From positions 124,001-188,000 of the IMG/VR virus record IMGVR_UViG_3300038441_001119: 64,000 bases of DNA; one strand, 5' to 3'. A program made the translations under genes and the position numbers. The notes below the pieces were generated by a model. That model was not told the DNA's origin. It was given only the letters and a program-made list of their open reading frames with translations, and made no database searches. Below, in pieces: positions 6,975-39,403 of the stretch (position 1 is the stretch's first letter; the number at the start of each line of letters is the position of its first letter).

Positions 6975-9900
6975 TTACGTGGAGACAGTTGTCTCTTTTC
7001 TTGTTTTCTTGTTGATCACGGCTTCCGCCATGTTCTTCTTGTAATAACCGATCATCGCTTCCAGTTCGTCTTCAAGATGTTCAAGCTCCTTGGGAGTTGT
7101 TATCTCCTTCAAAGCCTCATCATCAAGCTTCCCTGACGACCATGAGCGGTTAATTTCAGTTTCAATAGGGTAATTGAGGTATCTACCGTCGTAGTCCCAA
7201 ACCACCTTCCTGAACATGAAAAGTTCATGTGCCTTCTGCCAAATGTTGACCTCCGCAATAGGACAGAGGGTCACAACAGCATCATACAGTAGCACCATTG
7301 GTCGGCCTATCAAGCCTCTTGTGATGCCAAAATGCAAAAGATTCTGAGCAGCGATTGCAGACGTGGAGGCGACACTTTCCTGTAGAGGGGTGTTACGACA
7401 TTCACGTCCCTGTGCGCTCATCAGGGCATCCCATACACGAGGGTCCATCGTTTTTCTGGAATGGGTCCCCAACCAGTGTCGAATACGACCTGAGGCAAGC
7501 CTGAGGTGGTCTTCTGACTTAGGCAGCTCCTGTTGCTCTTCCAGATACGCCGTTGCGACGGGCTGGCGTTCCTGTAGAGCATCAAGGATACCCTGCCCGT
7601 CTCCGGGGTTGGGTTTGGCCCCTGTATCCGCTTCAATTTTGCGTTCAAGACTATTACCCGAGGCCCCGTATGCAGATGAGAAATTCCCCACCTTACCTGA
7701 GCCGTCACGGTCTTTCTTCTTATCCAACGCTTCCCGTGGTAACTTCTTGAACATCTCAGCGAGCGACCAGTGCAGGTCCTCCTTTCCGGGATGAACGATG
7801 TTACCGTTTTCATCACGAAGCAGATCGTCTTCAGTGATTTTCACCCATACAGTCGGTTCCTTTTCCTTACCTTTCTCTTTGGCTTCAGGGTAGGCTAGGA
7901 TGTACTTATCAAATTGGTTTTCTTCGGGAATACCGCAATCCTTCTTATAGTTCAGACGGACCGGGTTCTTTTTCTTTTTGTCCGACTTAAGGAAGCCGAA
8001 CTGTTTATCCGGGAGAGTGACCAGATCAATCAAGTTCTGATCTCCTGAGATGAATGCAAGTCCACGAATCTCAGCGGTCTCATAGTCTGATTCCACCATG
8101 AGCATACCCTCTGGAGCAGTGACTACCGAACGGATGGACGGCAGTGCTTTCTCCAGATAGATGTGCCAACGCTCAGGAAGTTCACCTTCCTTGTGCAGAG
8201 ATTTGAACAGGGCTGCTACCCCTTCCTCGATACGCTTGTTCACGTACGACGGCCAGTTGAGGATGTTTGGTTTCCAACAACGGTTACGGGCGGTTTCGGT
8301 TACAGAGGAGTTATAGTGCACCCTACCGTCTTTTGCGATCCAGTAGTGCAAACCATTCTCTTTAACCAACTCACCATCGTCATCATACTCTGCGGGTTTG
8401 AGGAACGCCTTTGCGGCGTTACCGACAGCATTGAAGTCCAACAGGAGGTTCAGAACCGGGTCCTTGTAGGTCACGGAGAACATCTGCAGGGACTGTTTGT
8501 CCACGGAAGGTGCGTAGTTTTGTCTTACATCTTTGGGCAGGTTCTTGACCTTGCTCCAATCCATTGACGGGAACCCTTGTTCCTTTTTATTAGTACTTTT
8601 TACTGGTTCGTACTGCTTAATATCGAACAGCCACCGTCGCATCTGTTCCGGGGCGCGAATATTAAATTCAGGTGCGTTCAGGTAATGACCGTGAATGGCG
8701 ATAGCATCGGATACATGATCCGTACCGAATGCTGCTTTGAGTTTGTCCAAACTAGGACCCTCAGGGTCGCTCATGTAATCACACGCGAGCGCCAACCCTT
8801 CTTCTTCATCTCCGACTACCCGCTGGCAAACTTGTACAACCAAATGAGTGGCTTCTCTGGTCATGGTGACTTGGAATCTCTTCTCAAGTTCAACCTTGGC
8901 GAATTGGTACAAGTCACGCAGCTCATTGAGCTTCTCCATGTCCACAGGCAAACCTTCATAAGAGAAGTTGGTGAACACGTCGGTCGTGAAGGGATTAAAG
9001 ATAGTTTCGTAGTACTGCGTCAGCTGTTGTCGCTCCATCTCTTGTACGAGGTATGGATAAGCTCGCATTACCACGTCAACGTCCGCCATTGCATACGGTA
9101 GCAACAGATCGTCAGGGATGTCGGCATATCCATCGGAGTGACCCAGAGGATGTGTCTTCAACCATATGACGAGAGGCAGGTCATACCGACCCAAGTCCGT
9201 ATACTTCAGAGCAAGATTGTCCAAACCGAGATCTGCGTGTTCGTTACAGCATTGCTGCGCGAACTCAGTGTCCAGAAGACACTTCTTATAGATCTCAAGG
9301 TTCAGCCACTTCTTCATCCATACGGCGTCCGCAGAATAATGGTGACCCAGATACTTTACCTCTTTTCTGTTCAACCAAGCACCCAGCACCTGACCCACCT
9401 TTTCATAGGAAGCATCAAATACATAGTTACGTTGGTCGTCCATGAATCGAATGGCACATGCATGCCCTTCTTTCCAACAGAACTGGATGGTACGTAGGTT
9501 ACCGTCGATAAAGTTGTTCCCACCCCACTCGCAGTCCACCGAGATGAGGGTGTGATTTTCTTGTGCCCACATAGTCACCAGATCCACAACTTGTTCAAGG
9601 TTGTTGATCACGTGATACGAGGTCTTCATGCGTTTGGTTTCGAAGCCACGTATGGAGTCATACATGTTTCGAATTTCAAATAGATTGATCCTGAATTTCT
9701 CCACGTAGTCTGGACGTGAAGCAAGCAGGTGAACTGGGTCAAGGAGGATGAAGCGACAGTCATACTCCTTGTTATAGAACCACCCCGCTTTGATGTCATC
9801 AGCTCGGTATTTGACCGGGCTGAAGAAATCAAATACCGCCTTACCGAGACATACGACTATCTTCGGTTTTACTTCCCTCACTTCACTGTCGAAGGAGGGG

Positions 9901-10322
9901 GAGGCAAAGCGTAGCGAGGTGGCGTCTGGCTTCAAACGTTTAGCCTTTGGTAGAAGCCACTTACACATCGCAGTGAAGTAGCAGTCATCTAGGCTTATTC
10001 CCGATTGCTGGATGAGGTCCTTGAGGACGCTACCAGCGAGACACTTCATGTATTCCGGAGTTTCCTTGATCGGCTTCTCATATCGTTCACCCTGCCGGTA
10101 TTCAACCGCGTCCTCAGACAGTAGGGAGGGCATCACGAACATGATATCTGCAGGGCTTTTACCGTTCCCTGCTACATACAAAACTTCGTCTTTCCTGCGG
10201 GTCGTAGTAATCTTGGCAGGTGGTTCTTCCTCGAAGTTAGGTTGTGTCGGATTGTCAGGGACGTCTGTGCGTGGTCCCTGCTTCTTTTTTTGCTTTCTCT
10301 CAAAGTACTCGTTGAAATCCAT
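6975..10322 (-). CDS. polA: Family A DNA polymerase with N-terminal UDG-like domain and 3'-5' exonuclease
   Basis: Exo I SVDCE; Exo III YAMAD; motif A SDYETAEIR; motif B R...KVGNFSSAYG; motif C LLYDAV; N-terminal YFTAMCK/PKIVVCLGK family-4 UDG pattern. Confidence 0.92.
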   Translation of the reverse strand: MDFNEYFERKQKKKQGPRTDVPDNPTQPNFEEEPPAKITTTRRKDEVLYVAGNGKSPADIMFVMPSLLSEDAVEYRQGERYEKPIKETPEYMKCLAGSVLKDLIQQSGISLDDCYFTAMCKWLLPKAKRLKPDATSLRFASPSFDSEVREVKPKIVVCLGKAVFDFFSPVKYRADDIKAGWFYNKEYDCRFILLDPVHLLASRPDYVEKFRINLFEIRNMYDSIRGFETKRMKTSYHVINNLEQVVDLVTMWAQENHTLISVDCEWGGNNFIDGNLRTIQFCWKEGHACAIRFMDDQRNYVFDASYEKVGQVLGAWLNRKEVKYLGHHYSADAVWMKKWLNLEIYKKCLLDTEFAQQCCNEHADLGLDNLALKYTDLGRYDLPLVIWLKTHPLGHSDGYADIPDDLLLPYAMADVDVVMRAYPYLVQEMERQQLTQYYETIFNPFTTDVFTNFSYEGLPVDMEKLNELRDLYQFAKVELEKRFQVTMTREATHLVVQVCQRVVGDEEEGLALACDYMSDPEGPSLDKLKAAFGTDHVSDAIAIHGHYLNAPEFNIRAPEQMRRWLFDIKQYEPVKSTNKKEQGFPSMDWSKVKNLPKDVRQNYAPSVDKQSLQMFSVTYKDPVLNLLLDFNAVGNAAKAFLKPAEYDDDGELVKENGLHYWIAKDGRVHYNSSVTETARNRCWKPNILNWPSYVNKRIEEGVAALFKSLHKEGELPERWHIYLEKALPSIRSVVTAPEGMLMVESDYETAEIRGLAFISGDQNLIDLVTLPDKQFGFLKSDKKKKNPVRLNYKKDCGIPEENQFDKYILAYPEAKEKGKEKEPTVWVKITEDDLLRDENGNIVHPGKEDLHWSLAEMFKKLPREALDKKKDRDGSGKVGNFSSAYGASGNSLERKIEADTGAKPNPGDGQGILDALQERQPVATAYLEEQQELPKSEDHLRLASGRIRHWLGTHSRKTMDPRVWDALMSAQGRECRNTPLQESVASTSAIAAQNLLHFGITRGLIGRPMVLLYDAVVTLCPIAEVNIWQKAHELFMFRKVVWDYDGRYLNYPIETEINRSWSSGKLDDEALKEITTPKELEHLEDELEAMIGYYKKNMAEAVINKKTRKETTVST

Positions 10323-10618: not shown

Positions 10619-10769
10619 CTTGTAAGGTGCGTGGCGCTTTGCGCTCGTGTACAACACCTTCTAGGAAGGCATAGTTGAATGCGCTGATGACGATCTCACT
10701 AGGGATAGCGATACCGGCATCTTTCTTCCACTTTTCTAGGGCAGCTTCTGCTGCATGTTTAATCATCAT
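10581..10769 (-). CDS. Small hypothetical protein
   Basis: 3' part of track ORF 10581..10901; ATG overlaps the upstream gene end. Confidence 0.45.
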   Translation of the reverse strand: MMIKHAAEAALEKWKKDAGIAIPSEIVISAFNYAFLEGVVHERKAPRTLQDEVPPEEAPETG

Positions 10770-10941
10770 CGTCTTCGTCGCCAAACTGTTCTGCATAGTC
10801 TTCTTTCGCGTAGTCGTACCCTTCCCAGTTATCAACTCCTGCGCCTTGTAGACAGAGCAGGAAATTTGAGTCACTGAGGAGAGACTTGTACTCTTCTTCA
10901 CTAATAGTAACAGTTGCCGAGCTTAGTTTTTCTTTTGCCAT
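10759..10941 (-). CDS. Small phage protein (GVDNWEGY family)
   Basis: LLCLQGAGVDNWEGY motif, recurrent in phage small proteins. Confidence 0.7.
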   Translation of the reverse strand: MAKEKLSSATVTISEEEYKSLLSDSNFLLCLQGAGVDNWEGYDYAKEDYAEQFGDEDDDD

Positions 10942-10943
10942 AA

Positions 10944-11327
10944 TTAGAGTTTCATAACGCGGTGGCAGCGGAGGCCGTCGTCGCTCTTACGGAAAGAGAA
11001 CTTGGTATCCGGATTGCGTTTGCTGAAGTATTGAGCTGCTGCCACACAGGCACGTCCTTCTGTAGTAGTGTAGTCTTCTCCTTCCATGAAGAAGCTGTCG
11101 CCAACTTGCATGTTGAGGAAAGGATACTGGTCCATCGAGGCGCGTTTGCGACGAGGGAAGGGGATACCTTTCTCGATCACATATTTCGAAGACGCCAACA
11201 GCACTCCGGTGTCTGCTTCGATTTTGCTGACACTGGTGGTGATCTTCGGATTCCGAACACCGCTGACGGTAGTGGTTTTGATGGAAGTGAAGATTTCCGA
11301 GCTGGTTTTGATATTACGGGTACTCAT
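10944..11327 (-). CDS. Small putative DNA-binding phage protein
   Basis: IEKGIPFP...YPFLNMQVGDSFF...FSFR motif. Confidence 0.7.
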   Translation of the reverse strand: MSTRNIKTSSEIFTSIKTTTVSGVRNPKITTSVSKIEADTGVLLASSKYVIEKGIPFPRRKRASMDQYPFLNMQVGDSFFMEGEDYTTTEGRACVAAAQYFSKRNPDTKFSFRKSDDGLRCHRVMKL

Positions 11328-12526
11328 TTAGATTTAGGCCAATTATTTTTGATAATACTTTCACACTTTTTGTCGCTCATTTCCCCGAAGTCTTTGTATT
11401 TGTCCGGTGGTGCAATGAGGACAACTTGTAGTCCAACACTAGACAGCATTTCAACTGCCTTGGTTACGCTGGCTTTACCAGTATCATCGTTATCCCGTGC
11501 ATAGAACACGAGATCAGTCGACTCTTTGATCTTGGATGCTTGTACATAGGACACTGTGGGACCGCACATAGGGAGACCCTCAAAGCCGAATCTAGCGGCG
11601 TCTAGGGGTCCTTCTGTGAGTACTGCGTGCCTGTCTTTCCGTGGGATATCCTTAATATGTTCTATGTAAGGATCGTAGCCCATCCATATTCCAGACTTAC
11701 TCTGCCCAGTACCATTTTTGTACTTGGATGGAGGCCATTTGAATTTGGCTGGTGTAAGTTCTGGTATGAAGTGAGGTTTTCCCGATTTACCTTTTCCAGT
11801 GGCTACCTTCACCATCTCGTGTTTGTACGGATGGTAATAGTAGATATTTCCTTCATCATCTTCCGCTTCGATCAACCTTGCCTGCCACCCTTTACGGATG
11901 CCATTCATGTAACCGAAGAAAACAACCCGACCCTGTGGAGTATCTTTCCAGTCCTTGATAAGGTATGGATAGTAGACTCCGTTTTCTGTTGTCGGCGTCA
12001 GTTCTGTTTTACAGAACGATGTACGAAACTTGTCGTACAGGAAACCAACATCGTATCCACGGTTTTCCAGATACCACCGGGCCATGTGGTCTGGTTTTAG
12101 ATCCTTGAGAGGTATACACTCGCCGGGTCCAAACGGAAATTTGTTCCCATGCTCGTCCTCTTCAAGGATGTGTTCTTTAGACGTGGAATTTAGAACGAAC
12201 AAGGTGGTGCTAACCTTCTGTTTGAGTCGTGTAGACACGGGCGGCATACCTAGTAGGGTCTTACCCTTGTATCCGGTCCCTTCTTTCATACAGGTTGCAA
12301 CCCATCCCTCTTCTTTCTCGCCGTCCATCTGAGACAACCATTCATCCAAACGGATGGCGAGGTGACGGCTGTTGAGTTCCTTGGACCCATCTTTGCGCAA
12401 GCACTCAGGGCATGGTATGTACAGGACACTACCGGAGCGTTCCTGTTTCATGTGACCATTACCATGAAGTCTGCACAGCGTGGATGCTAGGATCTTCAGC
12501 CGCTGTTGTCTCATGTTCTCGCTCAT
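11324..12526 (-). CDS. dnaG: DnaG-type DNA primase
   Basis: N-terminal Zn finger CPEC...H...C; TOPRIM TEGPLDA and RDNDDTG. Confidence 0.88.
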   Translation of the reverse strand: MSENMRQQRLKILASTLCRLHGNGHMKQERSGSVLYIPCPECLRKDGSKELNSRHLAIRLDEWLSQMDGEKEEGWVATCMKEGTGYKGKTLLGMPPVSTRLKQKVSTTLFVLNSTSKEHILEEDEHGNKFPFGPGECIPLKDLKPDHMARWYLENRGYDVGFLYDKFRTSFCKTELTPTTENGVYYPYLIKDWKDTPQGRVVFFGYMNGIRKGWQARLIEAEDDEGNIYYYHPYKHEMVKVATGKGKSGKPHFIPELTPAKFKWPPSKYKNGTGQSKSGIWMGYDPYIEHIKDIPRKDRHAVLTEGPLDAARFGFEGLPMCGPTVSYVQASKIKESTDLVFYARDNDDTGKASVTKAVEMLSSVGLQVVLIAPPDKYKDFGEMSDKKCESIIKNNWPKSK

Positions 12527-12726
12527 TAACTTCCGTTGTAAGAAATGCTGAAGCTATCAGGCGATCCCATCGAAGAGCTGTAGATGAAATTGTCACCTAG
12601 GGTGATTTCAGACAACTGCTGCTTGAGTTCTCGAATGGTTTCAGCCTGTTCATCAATGACGACCTGCATCCGCAAGATCGCGGACGTCTCGGTCTGTTCT
12701 GCTGTTTTAGGAGTAGTTTGGAACAT
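12526..12726 (-). CDS. Small coiled-coil hypothetical protein
   Basis: TAATG-coupled to primase. Confidence 0.6.
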   Translation of the reverse strand: MFQTTPKTAEQTETSAILRMQVVIDEQAETIRELKQQLSEITLGDNFIYSSSMGSPDSFSISYNGS

Positions 12727-12781
12727 GTATTTGTTGTGCTAGATAAAAACAATGACCACGGGTTTTGCCGACAGAGGGTTA

Positions 12782-12812
12782 GCCAACCCGGAGTATGCCT
12801 CTCCGGGTTGGC
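12782..12812. terminator. Perfect 12-bp hairpin downstream of 12820..13245
   Basis: GCCAACCCGGAG-TATGCCT-CTCCGGGTTGGC. Confidence 0.55.
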
Positions 12813-12819
12813 GTTGGCC

Positions 12820-13245
12820 TCACGCTCCCGCTTTGGAAGCGTTGAGGTATCTTGCGTGCTGGTTGGCAGCGTAAGCACCGGTTCTGTCGATTCTCCAAGC
12901 AGCGATCCCGTGTTTGCGGAGCTGCTTGTAGACTTCGTAAACGGTCTTTCCGGTGATTTCCATCGGGGCGCCGTTCACGTCTTGCGCCATATACTTCCCG
13001 GAGAAACGTTGCGATCCCACCTTTTTACCGCCACGAGTCACGTCAACAACACGGACGGCTGCGGTACGAAGGACGCTGTATTTCGGCGTGGCCTCGCGAT
13101 GGGCTGCTCGTGAAGCTGGGGCCGTTGCGGACCGCAGTTTCCGACGCTTCTCATGGCGAAGTTTGTTGCTGTTGGTGCGTGCCTTCTGGGTGGAATGGCT
13201 GGTGCTTCTCAGGTAACGCTTATGGCGTTTGCTTGCTTGGGGCAT
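12820..13245 (-). CDS. Highly basic hypothetical protein (possibly nucleic-acid binding)
   Basis: K/R/H-rich N-terminus; A/C-rich leader; followed by a hairpin. Confidence 0.65.
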   Translation of the reverse strand: MPQASKRHKRYLRSTSHSTQKARTNSNKLRHEKRRKLRSATAPASRAAHREATPKYSVLRTAAVRVVDVTRGGKKVGSQRFSGKYMAQDVNGAPMEITGKTVYEVYKQLRKHGIAAWRIDRTGAYAANQHARYLNASKAGA

Positions 13246-13277
13246 TGTGTGCTATAGGTGTATGGTTACATAAAACC

Positions 13278-13336
13278 AAGTCCCCCGTCACCACCCGCAA
13301 CGAACAGCGACGGACATTGCAGGTGGATAGGGACTT
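13278..13336 (-). ncRNA. Candidate structured leader RNA
   Basis: AAGUCCC/GGGACUU outer stem; CCACCUGCAA/UUGCGGGUGG inner stem; alternative CCGUCG/UGACGG pairing. Confidence 0.4.
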
Positions 13337-13386
13337 TTCGAACTTGTAGGATATTAGGTTTTTGAGACCTAATACACTATCATGGT

Positions 13387-13396
13387 TATATAGCAC
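13387..13396 (-). promoter_or_regulatory. GTGCTATATA promoter-like motif, copy 1
   Basis: Exact match to 39394..39403; both copies are intergenic at operon heads; resembles an extended -10. Confidence 0.5.
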
Positions 13397-13418
13397 GAAA
13401 CCCCAAGTAGATGCCGAC

Positions 13419-13450
13419 AAAAAGGGGCTGTAGTGAATTACCGCAGCCCC
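13419..13450 (-). terminator. Rho-independent terminator
   Basis: GGGGCTGCGGT-AATTC-ACTACAGCCCC-TTTTT. Confidence 0.8.
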
Positions 13451-13470
13451 AACATCTTTACGTCTTTCTA

Positions 13471-13545
13471 TTAGTAGGTGAAGTTGAACTCCAGTTGAGC
13501 GTTATCAGAGGTGGAGGTCTCGTTCGTGTCGTTTTTAATTTCCAT
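13471..13545 (-). CDS. 24-aa peptide MEIKNDTNETSTSDNAQLEFNFTY
   Basis: Hand-translated; TAA TAG double stop; TTGACT -35 upstream (13580..13585); terminator directly downstream. Confidence 0.6.
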   Translation of the reverse strand: MEIKNDTNETSTSDNAQLEFNFTY

Positions 13546-13701
13546 AGGAGCTGATAGTTTTGCCACATTTTGAGGGTATAGTCAAACAGAGTAGTTTCTC
13601 TAGGTTCCGGCTAAAGTGTTGACTCTGGTTGCATACACTCGGTAGTGACTGATACATATGGACTACTAAGTCCTGTTATGGAGTGTAAAGATGGAAAATT
13701 T

Positions 13702-15195
13702 TTATTTCCTCTCCTCCATTCTCTGCATTCCGAAATTCCGACGGAAGGGGACTGCACCGCCCTTGCCGTATCGACACTTTCCCACGAACAAGATCTGTTC
13801 AGGTAGATACAGCTCAGCCGTACCTCCGGACTCAGAAATGTTCTTATTCTGCATAGCTGACATGCCGATAACGGCAGCTACACCTTTTGCAGGAGCAAAG
13901 GATTCACCCAGATGCTCCTGACTGACGAAGGGTGTGTTGACCCCCTTCCTGTTTGTCTGTGCCAGATAGAGCACACAGATACTATGCTTACGAGCTGCTT
14001 GCAGCAACTGGGAAGCGGCATCTGCATAAACGTGACGGAGCTTGTCTCCTTCATCACTGGTACCCTTGGTGCCGGTCATGGTGTCTAGAGCGCCACCAAG
14101 CCAGTCAAGGATAATGAAGTCAGGAGCTTGCCCCTTGGCCTCCTTGAATTTGGCGATGATGTCCTCGAAAGACTCGTCGACATTGTCTGGAATAGTCCAG
14201 TCAATCATCCACAGGTTTTCGGTCATCTTCTCTTTCATCTCCTTATACTGAGCCTGCTTCTTCGGATCAGGCATGTCTTTCTTCGGATCGAAGTGACCCG
14301 CTATGTTGGACAAGTGCTCCCAGTCATAATGACAACAGTGGGAGATCAGACGTAGCTTGATGGAGGAAGGCGTTTCCTCAGTGGAGATAACTATACCCTT
14401 CAGGTTTTGAAGGATACAAAAGTTGGCGAGCATCTGGATAGTGAACGTGGTTTTACCCACACCAGTGTACGCCAGAACGAGATAGGTATTGGCTTTTCGA
14501 TAACCGCCTCCAAGAGCGCGGTCAAGCGCCTTCATACCAGTAGAAAGGCGCTCAAGGTCGTCCTTGGTTGCAAGCTCGACTTCATCGAATGAGAAAATAG
14601 TCTTCCCTTTTGGAGTATCACTAACATCCAAATCAGAAGCCTGTTTGAGAAGGCGTTTAAGGAGTGCGTTTGGGTTACGCTTGATTTCTCCAGAGTTCTC
14701 AGCTCTGGACATCTCCTTCTCGTACCGTACAGCCGTAAGCCACAGCTTGTACATCCCCGGAATAAGCATCACCGCTCGTTCCGATTTGGAGATCTTGATG
14801 ATCTCCTTCCATTCATTCTCCAGATCAGGAAGATCTCCCGCATTACCCATGTCCGGGTACTTCGAGAAGAAAATCTCACAGATCTGCGCCATGATCTTCC
14901 AATCAGGCGTTGTTACCGCTTTCTTTGATCCATCGACACCGACCAGTACCATGTACATGCGGAATGCCACAAACAGGATGTTCCGCGCCCGGGAATTGAA
15001 GTCCAGATGGAATCGACCATTTGGTTTATCCTGACAGACAAGATCAAGCCACTTCTTATGCTGTCCATAGTCCAAGACCACGGCAGCCATTGCGTTACGT
15101 TCAAACTCGTCCGGGTTGTCGTTGTAAAGTTTCTCGAAGAACGTGGCCGTGATGTCTATGGTCGGAGCAGCTTGCTTCGTATTAATGTGCGTCAT
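13702..15195 (-). CDS. dnaB: DnaB-like replicative helicase
   Basis: TGMKALDRALGGG; Walker A AYTGVGKTT; STEE; IILDW; LAQTNR; KCRYG. Confidence 0.9.
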   Translation of the reverse strand: MTHINTKQAAPTIDITATFFEKLYNDNPDEFERNAMAAVVLDYGQHKKWLDLVCQDKPNGRFHLDFNSRARNILFVAFRMYMVLVGVDGSKKAVTTPDWKIMAQICEIFFSKYPDMGNAGDLPDLENEWKEIIKISKSERAVMLIPGMYKLWLTAVRYEKEMSRAENSGEIKRNPNALLKRLLKQASDLDVSDTPKGKTIFSFDEVELATKDDLERLSTGMKALDRALGGGYRKANTYLVLAYTGVGKTTFTIQMLANFCILQNLKGIVISTEETPSSIKLRLISHCCHYDWEHLSNIAGHFDPKKDMPDPKKQAQYKEMKEKMTENLWMIDWTIPDNVDESFEDIIAKFKEAKGQAPDFIILDWLGGALDTMTGTKGTSDEGDKLRHVYADAASQLLQAARKHSICVLYLAQTNRKGVNTPFVSQEHLGESFAPAKGVAAVIGMSAMQNKNISESGGTAELYLPEQILFVGKCRYGKGGAVPFRRNFGMQRMEERK

Positions 15196-15871
15196 CTTCT
15201 TCTGCCTTCTTCGTCAAATTGTTATAGCTTTTACGGACATCCTCGACGGTTATTCCGGCGATTTCTTCCAAAGCGATGGGACGATAGTTTGATGCATCCA
15301 GCCAGTCAAGTGCCTCCTTACCATACTCTCTCATAATCCTTGCGGACTGAGGTAGAACAGCTACACGAGTCACTGCCATACAATCAAGTAGAACAGATCC
15401 GACCACCTTCTCTTTTTCTTCCATGTGGGAAGCCGAGAAAGGGTCCAGCTTACGAGCTTGCATACAGCTGAAGACTGTCTGTATATCAAATGCCAATTCA
15501 AGACTGTCCGGATTGGCGCAGTCTGCGATACTCAATTCAAAGATATCCAAGGCTTTAACATACTCGTCCCAACAGTTGTTGACGAACGATGCAGATTTCA
15601 GCTGGTTCTTGAATAGCTTCCTAGCCGCGTAGGGGTTTGAGTGTTGTCGTAATACCGATTGCTTGAAAACAGCACGAGTTACAAATGACGGGGGTGCTCC
15701 GATCTCCTTGCAGATAGCAGCAAATGTAGCCCACTCTGAGGGCACTTCACCACACTGACGACCCGGATCACCGTCGCGTTTTACTTCGTTAGCCCATGCG
15801 GCTTCGCAAGCCTCCCAAGCAGGATTTTTCTTCTTGGGTCTATCCTCTTCATAAAAGAATTCTTCACTCAT
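15182..15871 (-). CDS. Hypothetical protein (possibly helicase-associated)
   Basis: Directly upstream of dnaB; start MSEEFF inferred. Confidence 0.7.
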   Translation of the reverse strand: MSEEFFYEEDRPKKKNPAWEACEAAWANEVKRDGDPGRQCGEVPSEWATFAAICKEIGAPPSFVTRAVFKQSVLRQHSNPYAARKLFKNQLKSASFVNNCWDEYVKALDIFELSIADCANPDSLELAFDIQTVFSCMQARKLDPFSASHMEEKEKVVGSVLLDCMAVTRVAVLPQSARIMREYGKEALDWLDASNYRPIALEEIAGITVEDVRKSYNNLTKKAEEDDAH

Positions 15872-39393: not shown

Positions 39394-39403
39394 TATATAG
39401 CAC
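39394..39403 (-). promoter_or_regulatory. GTGCTATATA promoter-like motif, copy 2
   Basis: Exact match to 13387..13396; heads the accessory operon; followed by hairpins. Confidence 0.5.

What the first reader, a model, noticed from the sequence alone, without database searches (positions are those of the whole stretch)
13419..13585. Self-contained mini-transcription unit encoding a 24-aa peptide that ends QLEFNFTY
Seen: a TTGACT -35 with a weak -10, the ORF MEIKNDTNETSTSDNAQLEFNFTY with a double stop, then a clean terminator, all between dnaB and primase. It is below the ORF-track cutoff. The peptide is a polar linker plus one motif. Established: QLxLF and QLxLxL (Hda type) are beta-clamp-binding motifs, and QLEFNF fits the hexamer pattern. 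An alternating hydrophobic end with a terminal aromatic also resembles OMP beta-signals. Inference: a minimal peptide inhibitor or hijacker of the host sliding clamp.
Basis: partly seen in the sequence, partly recalled or inferred. Interest (0 to 1): 0.65.

Follow-up and report, generated by a model that had tools for sequence, protein, structure and literature searches.

The report
Conserved phage micro-gene with clamp-binding motif
A 24-codon gene just after the helicase gene of a 212-kb soil phage is kept in three distant relatives, always with a Gln-x-x-Phe-x-Phe end that resembles the motif bacterial proteins use to dock on the DNA sliding clamp, so it is probably a tiny peptide that occupies the host clamp, though this is untested at the bench.

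Summary
On the minus strand lie TTGACT (13585-13580), TGg+CAAAAC (13566-13557), ATG 13545, 24 codons (MEIKNDTNETSTSDNAQLEFNFTY), TAA TAG, and a hairpin with a T-run (13450-13419).

The window belongs to a 212-kb soil phage. That phage uses no Shine-Dalgarno sites, so the missing ribosome-binding site does not count against translation.

Three diverged relatives (helicase 42-44% identical) carry a 29-33-codon ORF at the same place, each with its own hairpin terminator and the same promoter-like layout. Only M1 and Q, F, F of Q-[LMA]-[WE]-F-[DNP]-F are invariant. Such an ORF arose in 2-5 of 20,000 shuffles per region.

A co-fold with the E. coli beta clamp scored 0.77 against 0.01 for the best control. 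It put Q17, L18, F20 and F22 into the canonical cleft. No phage clamp, clamp loader or OB-fold SSB was found by Pfam; replication looks family-A polymerase based.

Caveats:
- All four members have Phe at motif position 4, where known ligands have Leu or Met.
- The host is unknown.
- There are no RNA or protein data.
- The fold model may only recognise the likeness.

Verdict: a real, conserved micro-gene in a moron-like unit, most likely a clamp-cleft occupant. It is a new variant of a known kind.

The parts
13580..13585 (-). -35-like hexamer TTGACT
   Evidence: Read directly. The equivalents TTGACT (L008), TTTACA (L007) and TTGATT (L012) sit at the same spacing.
13557..13566 (-). extended -10-like element: TGg followed by CAAAAC
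   Evidence: TGn plus [C/T/A]A[A/C]AA[C] lies 17-18 nt after the -35-like hexamer in all four lineages and 8-12 nt before the ATG. It is weak by the sigma-70 consensus and was not called by the scan.
13471..13545 (-). micro-ORF, 24 codons plus TAA stop: MEIKNDTNETSTSDNAQLEFNFTY
   Evidence: Homologous ORFs of 30, 29 and 33 aa lie at the same place in L007, L008 and L012-L014. Shuffle test.
13480..13497 (-). codons for the motif QLEFNF (residues 17-22)
   Evidence: Residues Q17, L18, E19, F20 and F22 are the ones placed in the beta-clamp cleft in the co-fold.
13468..13470 (-). second in-frame stop, TAG
   Evidence: Not conserved in relatives.
13419..13450 (-). intrinsic-terminator-like hairpin (7+3 bp) with TTTTT
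   Evidence: Strong hairpins follow the micro-ORF in L007, L008 and, read from the sequence, L012. They are followed by T-runs in own, L007 and L008; in L012 the tail is only ATTCTT.
13387..13396 (-). phage promoter box GTGCTATATA that starts the next unit (boundary of the micro-unit)
   Evidence: The box occurs 13 times in the genome, all on the coding (minus) strand, each followed by N4-TGAG/TGG and a hairpin. The same box follows the terminator in L007 and L008, and follows dnaB directly in L006 and L009.
13702..15195 (-). DnaB-like replicative helicase gene (upstream neighbour, context)
   Evidence: Pfam DnaB_C at 6e-13. It was the anchor used to find relatives.
12820..13245 (-). 141-aa basic protein gene (downstream neighbour, context)
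   Evidence: No family hit. Homologous N-terminal basic region in L006, L007 and L009.

Best explanation
The region is a small autonomous accessory unit of the 'moron' type, inserted after the helicase gene of a soil jumbo phage. It consists of a weak extended -10 promoter with a very short leader, a 24-codon gene and an intrinsic terminator.

Its product is a disordered acidic peptide. Its only constrained part is the C-terminal hexamer Q-phi-x-F-x-F, which has the form of a bacterial beta-clamp-binding motif.

The proposed mechanism is as follows. The peptide inserts Phe20 and Phe22 into hydrophobic subsite I, and Gln17 and Leu18 into subsite II, of the host DnaN protein-binding cleft. There it competes with host Pol III alpha, the clamp loader, Hda and repair polymerases. 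Because it has no second domain, it can only block, not recruit. The phage replicates with its own family-A polymerase, DnaB-like helicase and primase, and no clamp gene was detected, so it would be spared.

Shown here: the sequence anatomy, conservation of the ORF and motif, and the absence of a detectable phage clamp. Modelled only: docking into the cleft. Inferred: translation, the short leader, and competition with or shut-off of host replication.
For: 1. Anatomy as described.

2. The same unit lies directly after the orthologous helicase gene in three further lineages, whose helicases are 42-44% identical to this one:
- L007: ...SNETQLWFDF*
- L008: ...DNEGQMWFDFTDPS*
- L012-L014: ...DNEGQAWFPFVSNS*

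3. Only M1, Q, F and F are invariant, while the linker varies in length and sequence. Q and F codons differ synonymously between lineages (CAA/CAG, TTC/TTT). That points to selection on the protein.

4. An ORF ending in Q..F.F arose in 2-5 of 20,000 shuffles per region.

5. The helicase tree puts all four carriers in one clade and needs one loss.

6. The invariant positions are the contact positions 1, 4 and 6 of the hexameric motif. Position 2 is L/M/A, as in QL.., QM.. and QADMF. Acidic flanks are typical.

7. The co-fold with E. coli DnaN scored 0.77 against 0.01 for the best of 3 controls. That mark is reached by 51 of 78 solved complexes and 2 of 108 mismatched pairs. The runs agree in at least 60% of contacts, and the partner pLDDT is at least 54. 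Contacts are beta 172, 174-175, 177, 242, 246-247 with F20/F22, and 320, 344, 346, 362-366 with Q17/L18. These are the published subsites.

8. No beta clamp, gp45, PCNA, clamp-loader or OB-fold SSB Pfam hit was found in the complete 212-kb record. A family-A polymerase, a DnaB-like helicase and a primase are present.

9. The phage uses no Shine-Dalgarno sites: 24 of 273 genes have a 4-mer core. The lack of one here is therefore normal.

10. Phages are known to target DnaN: Twort Gp168 and Mu MuC through clamp-binding motifs, which is toxic when overexpressed.
Against: - All four members have Phe at motif position 4. In known natural ligands only Leu or Met occupy it, and Phe there weakened E. 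coli inhibitor peptides.
- The co-fold used the E. coli clamp, not the unknown host's. The tool warns that a pass can come from memory of solved complexes. The partner (24 aa) is shorter than anything in its calibration.
- There are no RNA runs for this phage, so neither transcription from the weak promoter nor translation is shown.
- The -10-like hexamer lacks the conserved final T in all four lineages.
- A single motif of about micromolar affinity would need high expression to compete.
- The unit is dispensable: it is absent at this place in L006, L009, L015, L016-L021 and L024-L027.
- Only four lineages exist, all from metagenomes.
Confidence: 0.45

Rival explanations
1. The peptide is real, but its hydrophobic/acidic C-terminal motif docks on a different hub. 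Candidates are a phage replisome protein (the adjacent DnaB-like helicase, the primase, the family-A polymerase or the neighbouring basic protein) or another host protein. In that case it would act like the acidic tails of phage T7 gp4/gp2.5 or bacterial SSB, which bind partner proteins.
For: - The unit is always immediately downstream of the helicase gene.
- The composition (S/T/D/E/N-rich linker with an aromatic acidic end) resembles such tails (own knowledge; the T7 literature is listed).
- Phe at position 4 in all members departs from the known clamp ligands.
- The phage replisome is T7-like in make-up.
Against: - Tail-type recognition needs the aromatic residue at the very C-terminus with its free carboxylate (own knowledge). 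Here 0, 2, 4 and 5 residues follow the motif in the four lineages.
- The invariant Gln is the hallmark of clamp motifs and is not a feature of those tails.
- The clamp co-fold passed with controls at 0.01.
Confidence: 0.25
2. The ORF is a cis-acting regulatory leader, working by attenuation or ribosome arrest, whose translation controls the terminator and hence read-through into the downstream genes.
For: - A short ORF lies 18-29 nt before a terminator in all four lineages.
- The motif is rich in Phe and Trp.
- The whole 287-nt intergenic RNA folds better than shuffles, with z = -3.7.
Against: - The terminator hairpin stays free of alternative pairing in both the MFE and the centroid fold.
- No antiterminator complement of the stem is present in the ORF.
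- The downstream genes have their own strong, genome-wide promoter box right after the terminator.
- Relatives without the unit simply place that box after dnaB.
- The distance from the motif to the stop varies from 0 to 5 codons, which does not fit an arrest peptide.
Confidence: 0.08
3. The ORF is not translated. The conserved sequence is a promoter, RNA or terminator element, or a small RNA, and the open frame is incidental.
For: - No expression data exist.
- The -10 is weak.
- The gene is below gene-caller size, and an overlapping 36-codon frame exists (13568-13458).
- The intergenic RNA is structured.
Against: - Conservation is at the amino-acid level, with synonymous codon changes at Q, L and F.
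- The linker is unalignable at the DNA level, yet the frame, the ATG and the motif are kept in four lineages.
- Chance ORFs of this kind appear in about 1-2.5 of 10,000 shuffles.
- The overlapping frame is not kept in L008: its upstream ATG is out of frame with the micro-ORF.
- No Rfam family matched.
Confidence: 0.1

Closest known systems
Bacterial beta-clamp-binding motifs (hexameric class): Pol III alpha C-terminus SEQVELEFD, Pol IV RQLVLGL, Hda QLSLPL
   Same: - Gln at position 1, an aliphatic residue at 2, free positions 3 and 5, and hydrophobic residues at 4 and 6.
- Location in a disordered, acidic terminal segment.
- The modelled pose uses the same subsites I and II.
   Different: - Position 4 is Phe, not Leu or Met, in all four members.
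- The motif is not attached to any enzyme or domain; it is essentially the whole gene product.
Phage Mu MuC / Mor (clamp-binding motifs QHDLF and QPDLF)
   Same: A phage protein that engages host DnaN through short Gln-initiated motifs. Overexpression is toxic through clamp binding.
   Different: MuC is a folded transcription activator that uses the clamp to drive late transcription. The peptide here has nothing to recruit, so it can only occupy the site.
Staphylococcus phage Twort Gp168 (and G1 gp240)
   Same: A small phage-encoded protein that targets the host beta clamp to stop host replication during takeover.
   Different: Gp168 is a folded oligomer that plugs the DNA channel of the ring, not the protein-binding cleft. 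There is no sequence similarity: PHROGs and Pfam found nothing.
Synthetic clamp-motif peptides (Ac-QLDLF and derivatives) and griselimycin
   Same: The same proposed mode of action: a short peptide competitively occupying the clamp cleft.
   Different: Those are man-made peptides or non-ribosomal natural products. This one would be a ribosomal, phage-encoded version.
Phage 'morons' (promoter-gene-terminator units between conserved genes)
   Same: A self-contained unit of about 300 nt that is present or absent at one fixed junction between conserved genes.
   Different: It is far smaller than typical morons, and the promoter is inferred only from conserved geometry.
C-terminal clamp-binding tails of T4/RB69 DNA polymerase and T4 gp33/gp55 (own knowledge, not tested)
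   Same: Short acidic or aromatic C-terminal peptides (such as ...LFDMFDF) that insert into a sliding-clamp pocket.
   Different: Those bind the phage's own gp45 clamp. No gp45-like or any other clamp gene was detected in this phage.

Membership tests
Beta-clamp-binding motif (CBM), hexameric class Q-phi-x-[L/M]-x-[F/L] | Gln at position 1 | tested here: met
   Q is invariant in all four lineages. Definition.
Beta-clamp-binding motif (CBM), hexameric class Q-phi-x-[L/M]-x-[F/L] | Aliphatic residue at position 2 | tested here: met
   L, L, M and A. Ala occurs in the Pol III alpha motif QADMF, though with lower affinity.
Beta-clamp-binding motif (CBM), hexameric class Q-phi-x-[L/M]-x-[F/L] | Leu or Met at position 4 | tested here: not met
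   Phe in all four. The review states that only Leu or Met occur there in known ligands and that Phe weakened E. coli inhibitor peptides. The peptide is therefore not filed as a canonical member, only as working like one.
Beta-clamp-binding motif (CBM), hexameric class Q-phi-x-[L/M]-x-[F/L] | Phe or Leu at position 6 | tested here: met
   Phe is invariant.
Beta-clamp-binding motif (CBM), hexameric class Q-phi-x-[L/M]-x-[F/L] | Lies in a disordered or terminal segment with negatively charged flanks | tested here: met
   The motif lies 0-5 residues from the C-terminus, and the linker is rich in D/E/S/T/N.
Beta-clamp-binding motif (CBM), hexameric class Q-phi-x-[L/M]-x-[F/L] | Binds subsites I and II of the DnaN cleft | tested here: inconclusive
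   The model alone supports it: score 0.77 against 0.01 for the best control, with contacts at the published subsite residues. It was run on the E. coli clamp, may be recalled from solved complexes, and is not a measurement.
Phage moron (autonomous accessory transcription unit) | Own promoter and own terminator flanking a non-essential gene between conserved genes; presence or absence among relatives | tested here: inconclusive
   The terminator and the presence/absence pattern are met. The promoter is supported only by conserved -35/TGn/-10 geometry. No transcript data exist.
Outer-membrane-protein beta-signal | Aromatic residue at the extreme C-terminus of a secreted protein | tested here: not met
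   L008 ends ...TDPS and L012 ends ...VSNS. No member has a signal peptide.
PCNA PIP box Qxx[LIM]xx[FY][FY] | Two aromatic residues at positions 7-8 | tested here: not met
   Own has T-Y at positions 7-8. L007 ends at position 6.
SSB / T7 gp2.5-gp4 type acidic C-terminal tail | Terminal aromatic residue with free carboxylate at the very end | tested here: not met
   0, 2, 4 and 5 residues follow the last Phe of the motif in the four lineages. The defining feature is from own knowledge.
Attenuator leader peptide | Alternative antiterminator pairing that overlaps the ORF and the terminator | tested here: not met
   The terminator hairpin stands alone in the MFE and centroid folds. An independent promoter box follows it.

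The most novel reading that the evidence does not exclude
A phage-encoded, ribosomally made peptide of 24-33 residues that consists of little more than a clamp-binding motif. It would act as a free competitive plug of the host DnaN protein-binding cleft. It would be the smallest known phage host-takeover factor and a natural counterpart of synthetic clamp-motif inhibitors, with an unusual Phe at motif position 4 that may report host-specific tuning of the cleft.
Probability: 0.4. Interest if true: 0.75.

Novelty: new variant of a known kind. Interest (0 to 1): 0.62.

Why it matters
The beta clamp cleft is a validated antibacterial target, and peptide and griselimycin-type inhibitors are being developed against it. 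A natural, genetically encoded, motif-only inhibitor selected by a phage would do three things:

- It would show that bare cleft occupation is enough for host takeover.
- It would offer a new sequence solution (Q-phi-x-F-x-F) to study.
- It would give a simple search rule for similar micro-genes, which gene callers skip: this one is below the 30-codon limit and was not called in any of the four identical contigs.

It is also a clean example of a conserved functional gene of 24 codons in a phage without Shine-Dalgarno sites.

Tried and rejected
Searches that found nothing useful:
- Rfam on 12000-15500: nothing relevant.
- tRNA scan: none.
- blastn and tblastn against 50,697 phage records: no close kin. 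There were only 24% identical Staphylococcus phage helicases, and no match to the peptide.
- Helicase searches of IMG/VR, metagenome and genome contigs: only the phage itself or remote hits.
- A degenerate DNA pattern for DNEGQxWFxF in viral contigs: none.
A second word search with seven helicases added nothing.
- PHROGs, Pfam, PDB and Atlas searches with the peptides: nothing meaningful.
- Sequencing runs: soil DNA only, no RNA. Laying contigs gave only short identical fragments and no variation.
- More distant helicase lineages (P0012-P0015) lack the unit.

Readings considered and rejected:
- OMP beta-signal, PIP box, SSB/T7-type tail and attenuator leader (see the membership test).
- The longer 31-aa version starting at GTG 13566. 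That GTG lies inside the conserved TGn/-10 element, and the equivalent ATG in L008 is out of frame.
- A phage-encoded clamp as the target. No clamp or clamp loader was found by Pfam. The weak PHROG clamp-loader matches of an AAA protein are generic AAA similarity.

Host identification was not achieved.

Full report
**What the window is.** The window is bases 124001-188000 of a 212,352-bp IMG/VR virus record that CheckV rates complete. Its GC content is 49.6%. About 245 of 273 crude gene calls lie on the minus strand. Near-identical contigs occur in several soil metagenomes. Around the finding the minus strand encodes:
- SbcCD-like nuclease subunits;
- a DEAD-box helicase;
- a 241-aa protein with no family match;
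- a DnaB-like helicase (13702-15195; Pfam DnaB_C 6e-13);
- a 141-aa basic protein (12820-13245) and a 66-aa ORF;
- a Toprim primase (11324-12526);
- a T7 gp5.9-like ORF;
- a 1115-aa family-A polymerase with a UDG-like N-terminus.

**The observation.** It is correct but lies on the minus strand. The elements are:
- TTGACT at 13585-13580;
- a 17-nt spacer ending in TGg;
- CAAAAC at 13562-13557;
- 11 nt, then ATG at 13545;
- 24 codons giving MEIKNDTNETSTSDNAQLEFNFTY;
- TAA TAG;
- a 7+3-bp hairpin with TTTTT at 13450-13419 (centroid -16.4 kcal/mol, z = -2.4).

The consensus scanner called neither the promoter nor the terminator. No SD sequence precedes the ATG. That is normal for this phage: only 24 of 273 genes have even a 4-mer SD core, and the upstream regions are G-poor.

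**Is it more than chance?** The four near-identical contigs are uninformative, being 100% identical over this stretch. The word search and the exhaustive representative search with the helicase found a small clade of relatives at 42-44% identity. Three further lineages carry a short ORF at exactly this place, each followed by its own strong hairpin:
- L007: MKQETEISQDTGTSTGTEGSSNETQLWFDF.
- L008: MKQETSTTQQENEVFDNEGQMWFDFTDPS.
- L012-L014: MKHMTLNTTVIKNADELEFDNEGQAWFPFVSNS.

Gene callers had called the ORFs in L007 and L008. The 24-codon ORF here appears in none of the gene tables of the four identical contigs.

In the four-way alignment only M1 and Q, F, F of Q-[LMA]-[WE]-F-[DNP]-F are invariant. 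The linker differs in length and sequence. Codons for the conserved Q, L and F differ synonymously between lineages, and the flanking DNA is barely alignable. An ATG-ORF of at least 20 aa ending in Q..F.F arose in 2-5 of 20,000 shuffles of each intergenic region. In six frames of the whole genome, Q[LM].F.F occurs three times, and only here next to a stop.

On the helicase tree the four carriers fall in one six-member clade. One loss, in the P0004/P0005 lineage, explains the pattern. In those two contigs, and in more distant lineages, the next gene or its promoter box follows dnaB directly. I conclude that this is a real, selected micro-gene.

**Transcription unit.** All four lineages show the same layout: a -35-like hexamer (TTGACT, TTGACT, TTTACA, TTGATT), a 17-18-nt spacer that ends in TGn, a hexamer [C/T/A]A[A/C]AA[C], and the ATG 8-12 nt later. 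This looks like a weak extended -10 promoter. The leader would then be only a few nucleotides, which is an inference. The final T of a sigma-70 -10 is missing in every lineage, and there are no transcript data. Co-transcription with dnaB therefore cannot be excluded.

Right after the terminator sits GTGCTATATA (13396-13387). This box occurs 13 times in the genome, always on the coding strand. It is followed by N4-TGAG/TGG and a hairpin, so it is evidently the phage's own promoter class. The same box follows the terminator in L007 and L008, and follows dnaB directly where the unit is absent. The unit therefore behaves as a roughly 300-nt insertion/deletion module, that is, a moron.

**Function.** The review of beta-clamp ligands defines the natural motifs as Q-phi-x-[L/M]-[F/L] and Q-phi-x-[L/M]-x-[F/L]. 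Contacts are made by positions 1, 2, 4 and 5/6. Positions 3 and 5 are free, flanks are acidic, and the location is often C-terminal. An example is the Pol III alpha peptide SEQVELEFD, with a Kd of about 1.4 uM. The invariant positions of the phage family are exactly 1, 4 and 6, and position 2 is L/M/A.

One job of complex prediction with Swiss-Prot DPO3B_ECOLI gave the following:
- Score 0.77 in three runs, against 0.01 for the best of three controls. This mark is reached by 51 of 78 solved complexes and 2 of 108 mismatched pairs.
- The runs agree in at least 60% of contacts, and the partner pLDDT is at least 54.
- F20 and F22 touch beta 172, 174, 175, 177, 242 and 247. Residue 246 also lies in the interface.
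- Q17 and L18 touch 320, 344 and 362-365.

Residues 172, 174, 175, 177, 242, 246 and 247 are named as subsite I in the review. Val344 is named as subsite II, and Met362 lies in the pocket.

The tool's own caveats apply. The pass may be memory of solved clamp-peptide complexes, so it shows likeness rather than binding. The partner is shorter than anything in the calibration. E. coli is not the host.

The complete phage record has no Pfam-detectable beta clamp, gp45, PCNA, clamp loader or OB-fold SSB. Blocking the host clamp would therefore not obviously hurt a replisome built on a family-A polymerase. Phages are known to target DnaN: Twort Gp168 plugs the DNA channel, G1 gp240 is listed, and Mu MuC uses two clamp motifs and is toxic through them.

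**Against the clamp reading.** Position 4 is Phe in all four members. Natural ligands have only Leu or Met there, and Phe weakened inhibitor peptides on the E. coli clamp. This may be tuning to an unknown host clamp, or it may mean that the true partner is another protein. The position next to dnaB and the tail-like composition keep open a phage-replisome partner (rival 1), which I could not test. Variable extensions after the motif (0-5 residues) argue against SSB/T7-type recognition of a terminal carboxylate and against the OMP beta-signal idea. An attenuator reading is unlikely, because the terminator has no competing structure and an independent promoter follows it.

**Verdict.**
- The micro-gene is real: about 0.85 that it is a selected coding sequence.
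- The clamp-cleft-occupant mechanism is the best-supported explanation, at about 0.45. No experimental evidence exists.
- It is a new variant of a known kind: phage factors that target the sliding clamp, and clamp-binding short linear motifs.

Noticed in passing
window 13387-13396 and 39394-39403; 11 more in G000 outside the window: A phage promoter-like box, GTG[C/T]TATATA followed by N4-TGAG/TGG and then a hairpin, occurs 13 times, all on the coding (minus) strand and mostly just after terminators. It is probably the phage's main intergenic promoter class. It is also present in relatives L006-L009.
   Followed up: partly
whole genome G000: Essentially no Shine-Dalgarno usage: 24 of 273 genes have a 4-mer core, and upstream regions are G-poor and rich in A and C. 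This points to a host with SD-independent initiation. The host was not identified.
   Followed up: partly
window 10759-10941 (-): A 60-aa ORF carries a precomputed Pfam hit to Phage_T7_Gp5_9, a RecBCD-inhibitor family. It lies between the primase region and the polymerase.
   Followed up: no
window 6975-10322 (-): A 1115-aa protein combines a UDG-superfamily domain, a 3'-5' exonuclease and a family-A DNA polymerase. The same fusion is seen in the distant relatives L016 and L017.
   Followed up: no
G000:C1:109219-109803 (-), locus L028:220-804: A 194-aa protein with no family match ends in ...KFPFQIQLFLIK. Its QIQLF/QIQLFL fits the clamp-motif pattern at a C-terminus. It could be a second clamp-binding phage protein or a buried beta-strand.
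   Followed up: partly
G000:C1:38290-39999 (-), locus L029:91-1800: A 569-aa AAA ATPase has an internal QIWFPF at residue 218, close to the QAWFPF of the L012 peptide. It is probably inside a folded domain, so it may well be chance.
   Followed up: partly
window 13677-13688 (-) and L012:4452-4463: TTTACACTCCAT is conserved right after the helicase stop codon in this phage and in L012/L014, although the rest of the spacer has diverged. Its function is unknown.
   Followed up: no
window 13415-13701 (-): The whole intergenic RNA folds better than shuffles (z = -3.7). A stem (CAGAGU...ACUCUG) ends just before the TTGACT hexamer, and there is a small GGACU/AGUCC hairpin after dnaB. L007 has a 13-bp hairpin at the equivalent place. 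This could be a processing or pause site; it is unexplained.
   Followed up: no
L006:3354-5267 and L006:8823-9575: In the relative L006 the DEAD-box helicase is 637 aa and has a Hom_end_hint (intein) hit, against 494 aa here. An AcrVA2-like gene sits downstream of dnaB, which suggests that this junction collects accessory and anti-defence genes.
   Followed up: no
window 13458-13568 (-): An overlapping 36-codon ATG-ORF lies in another frame across the micro-ORF. It is not conserved in L008 and is judged incidental.
   Followed up: yes
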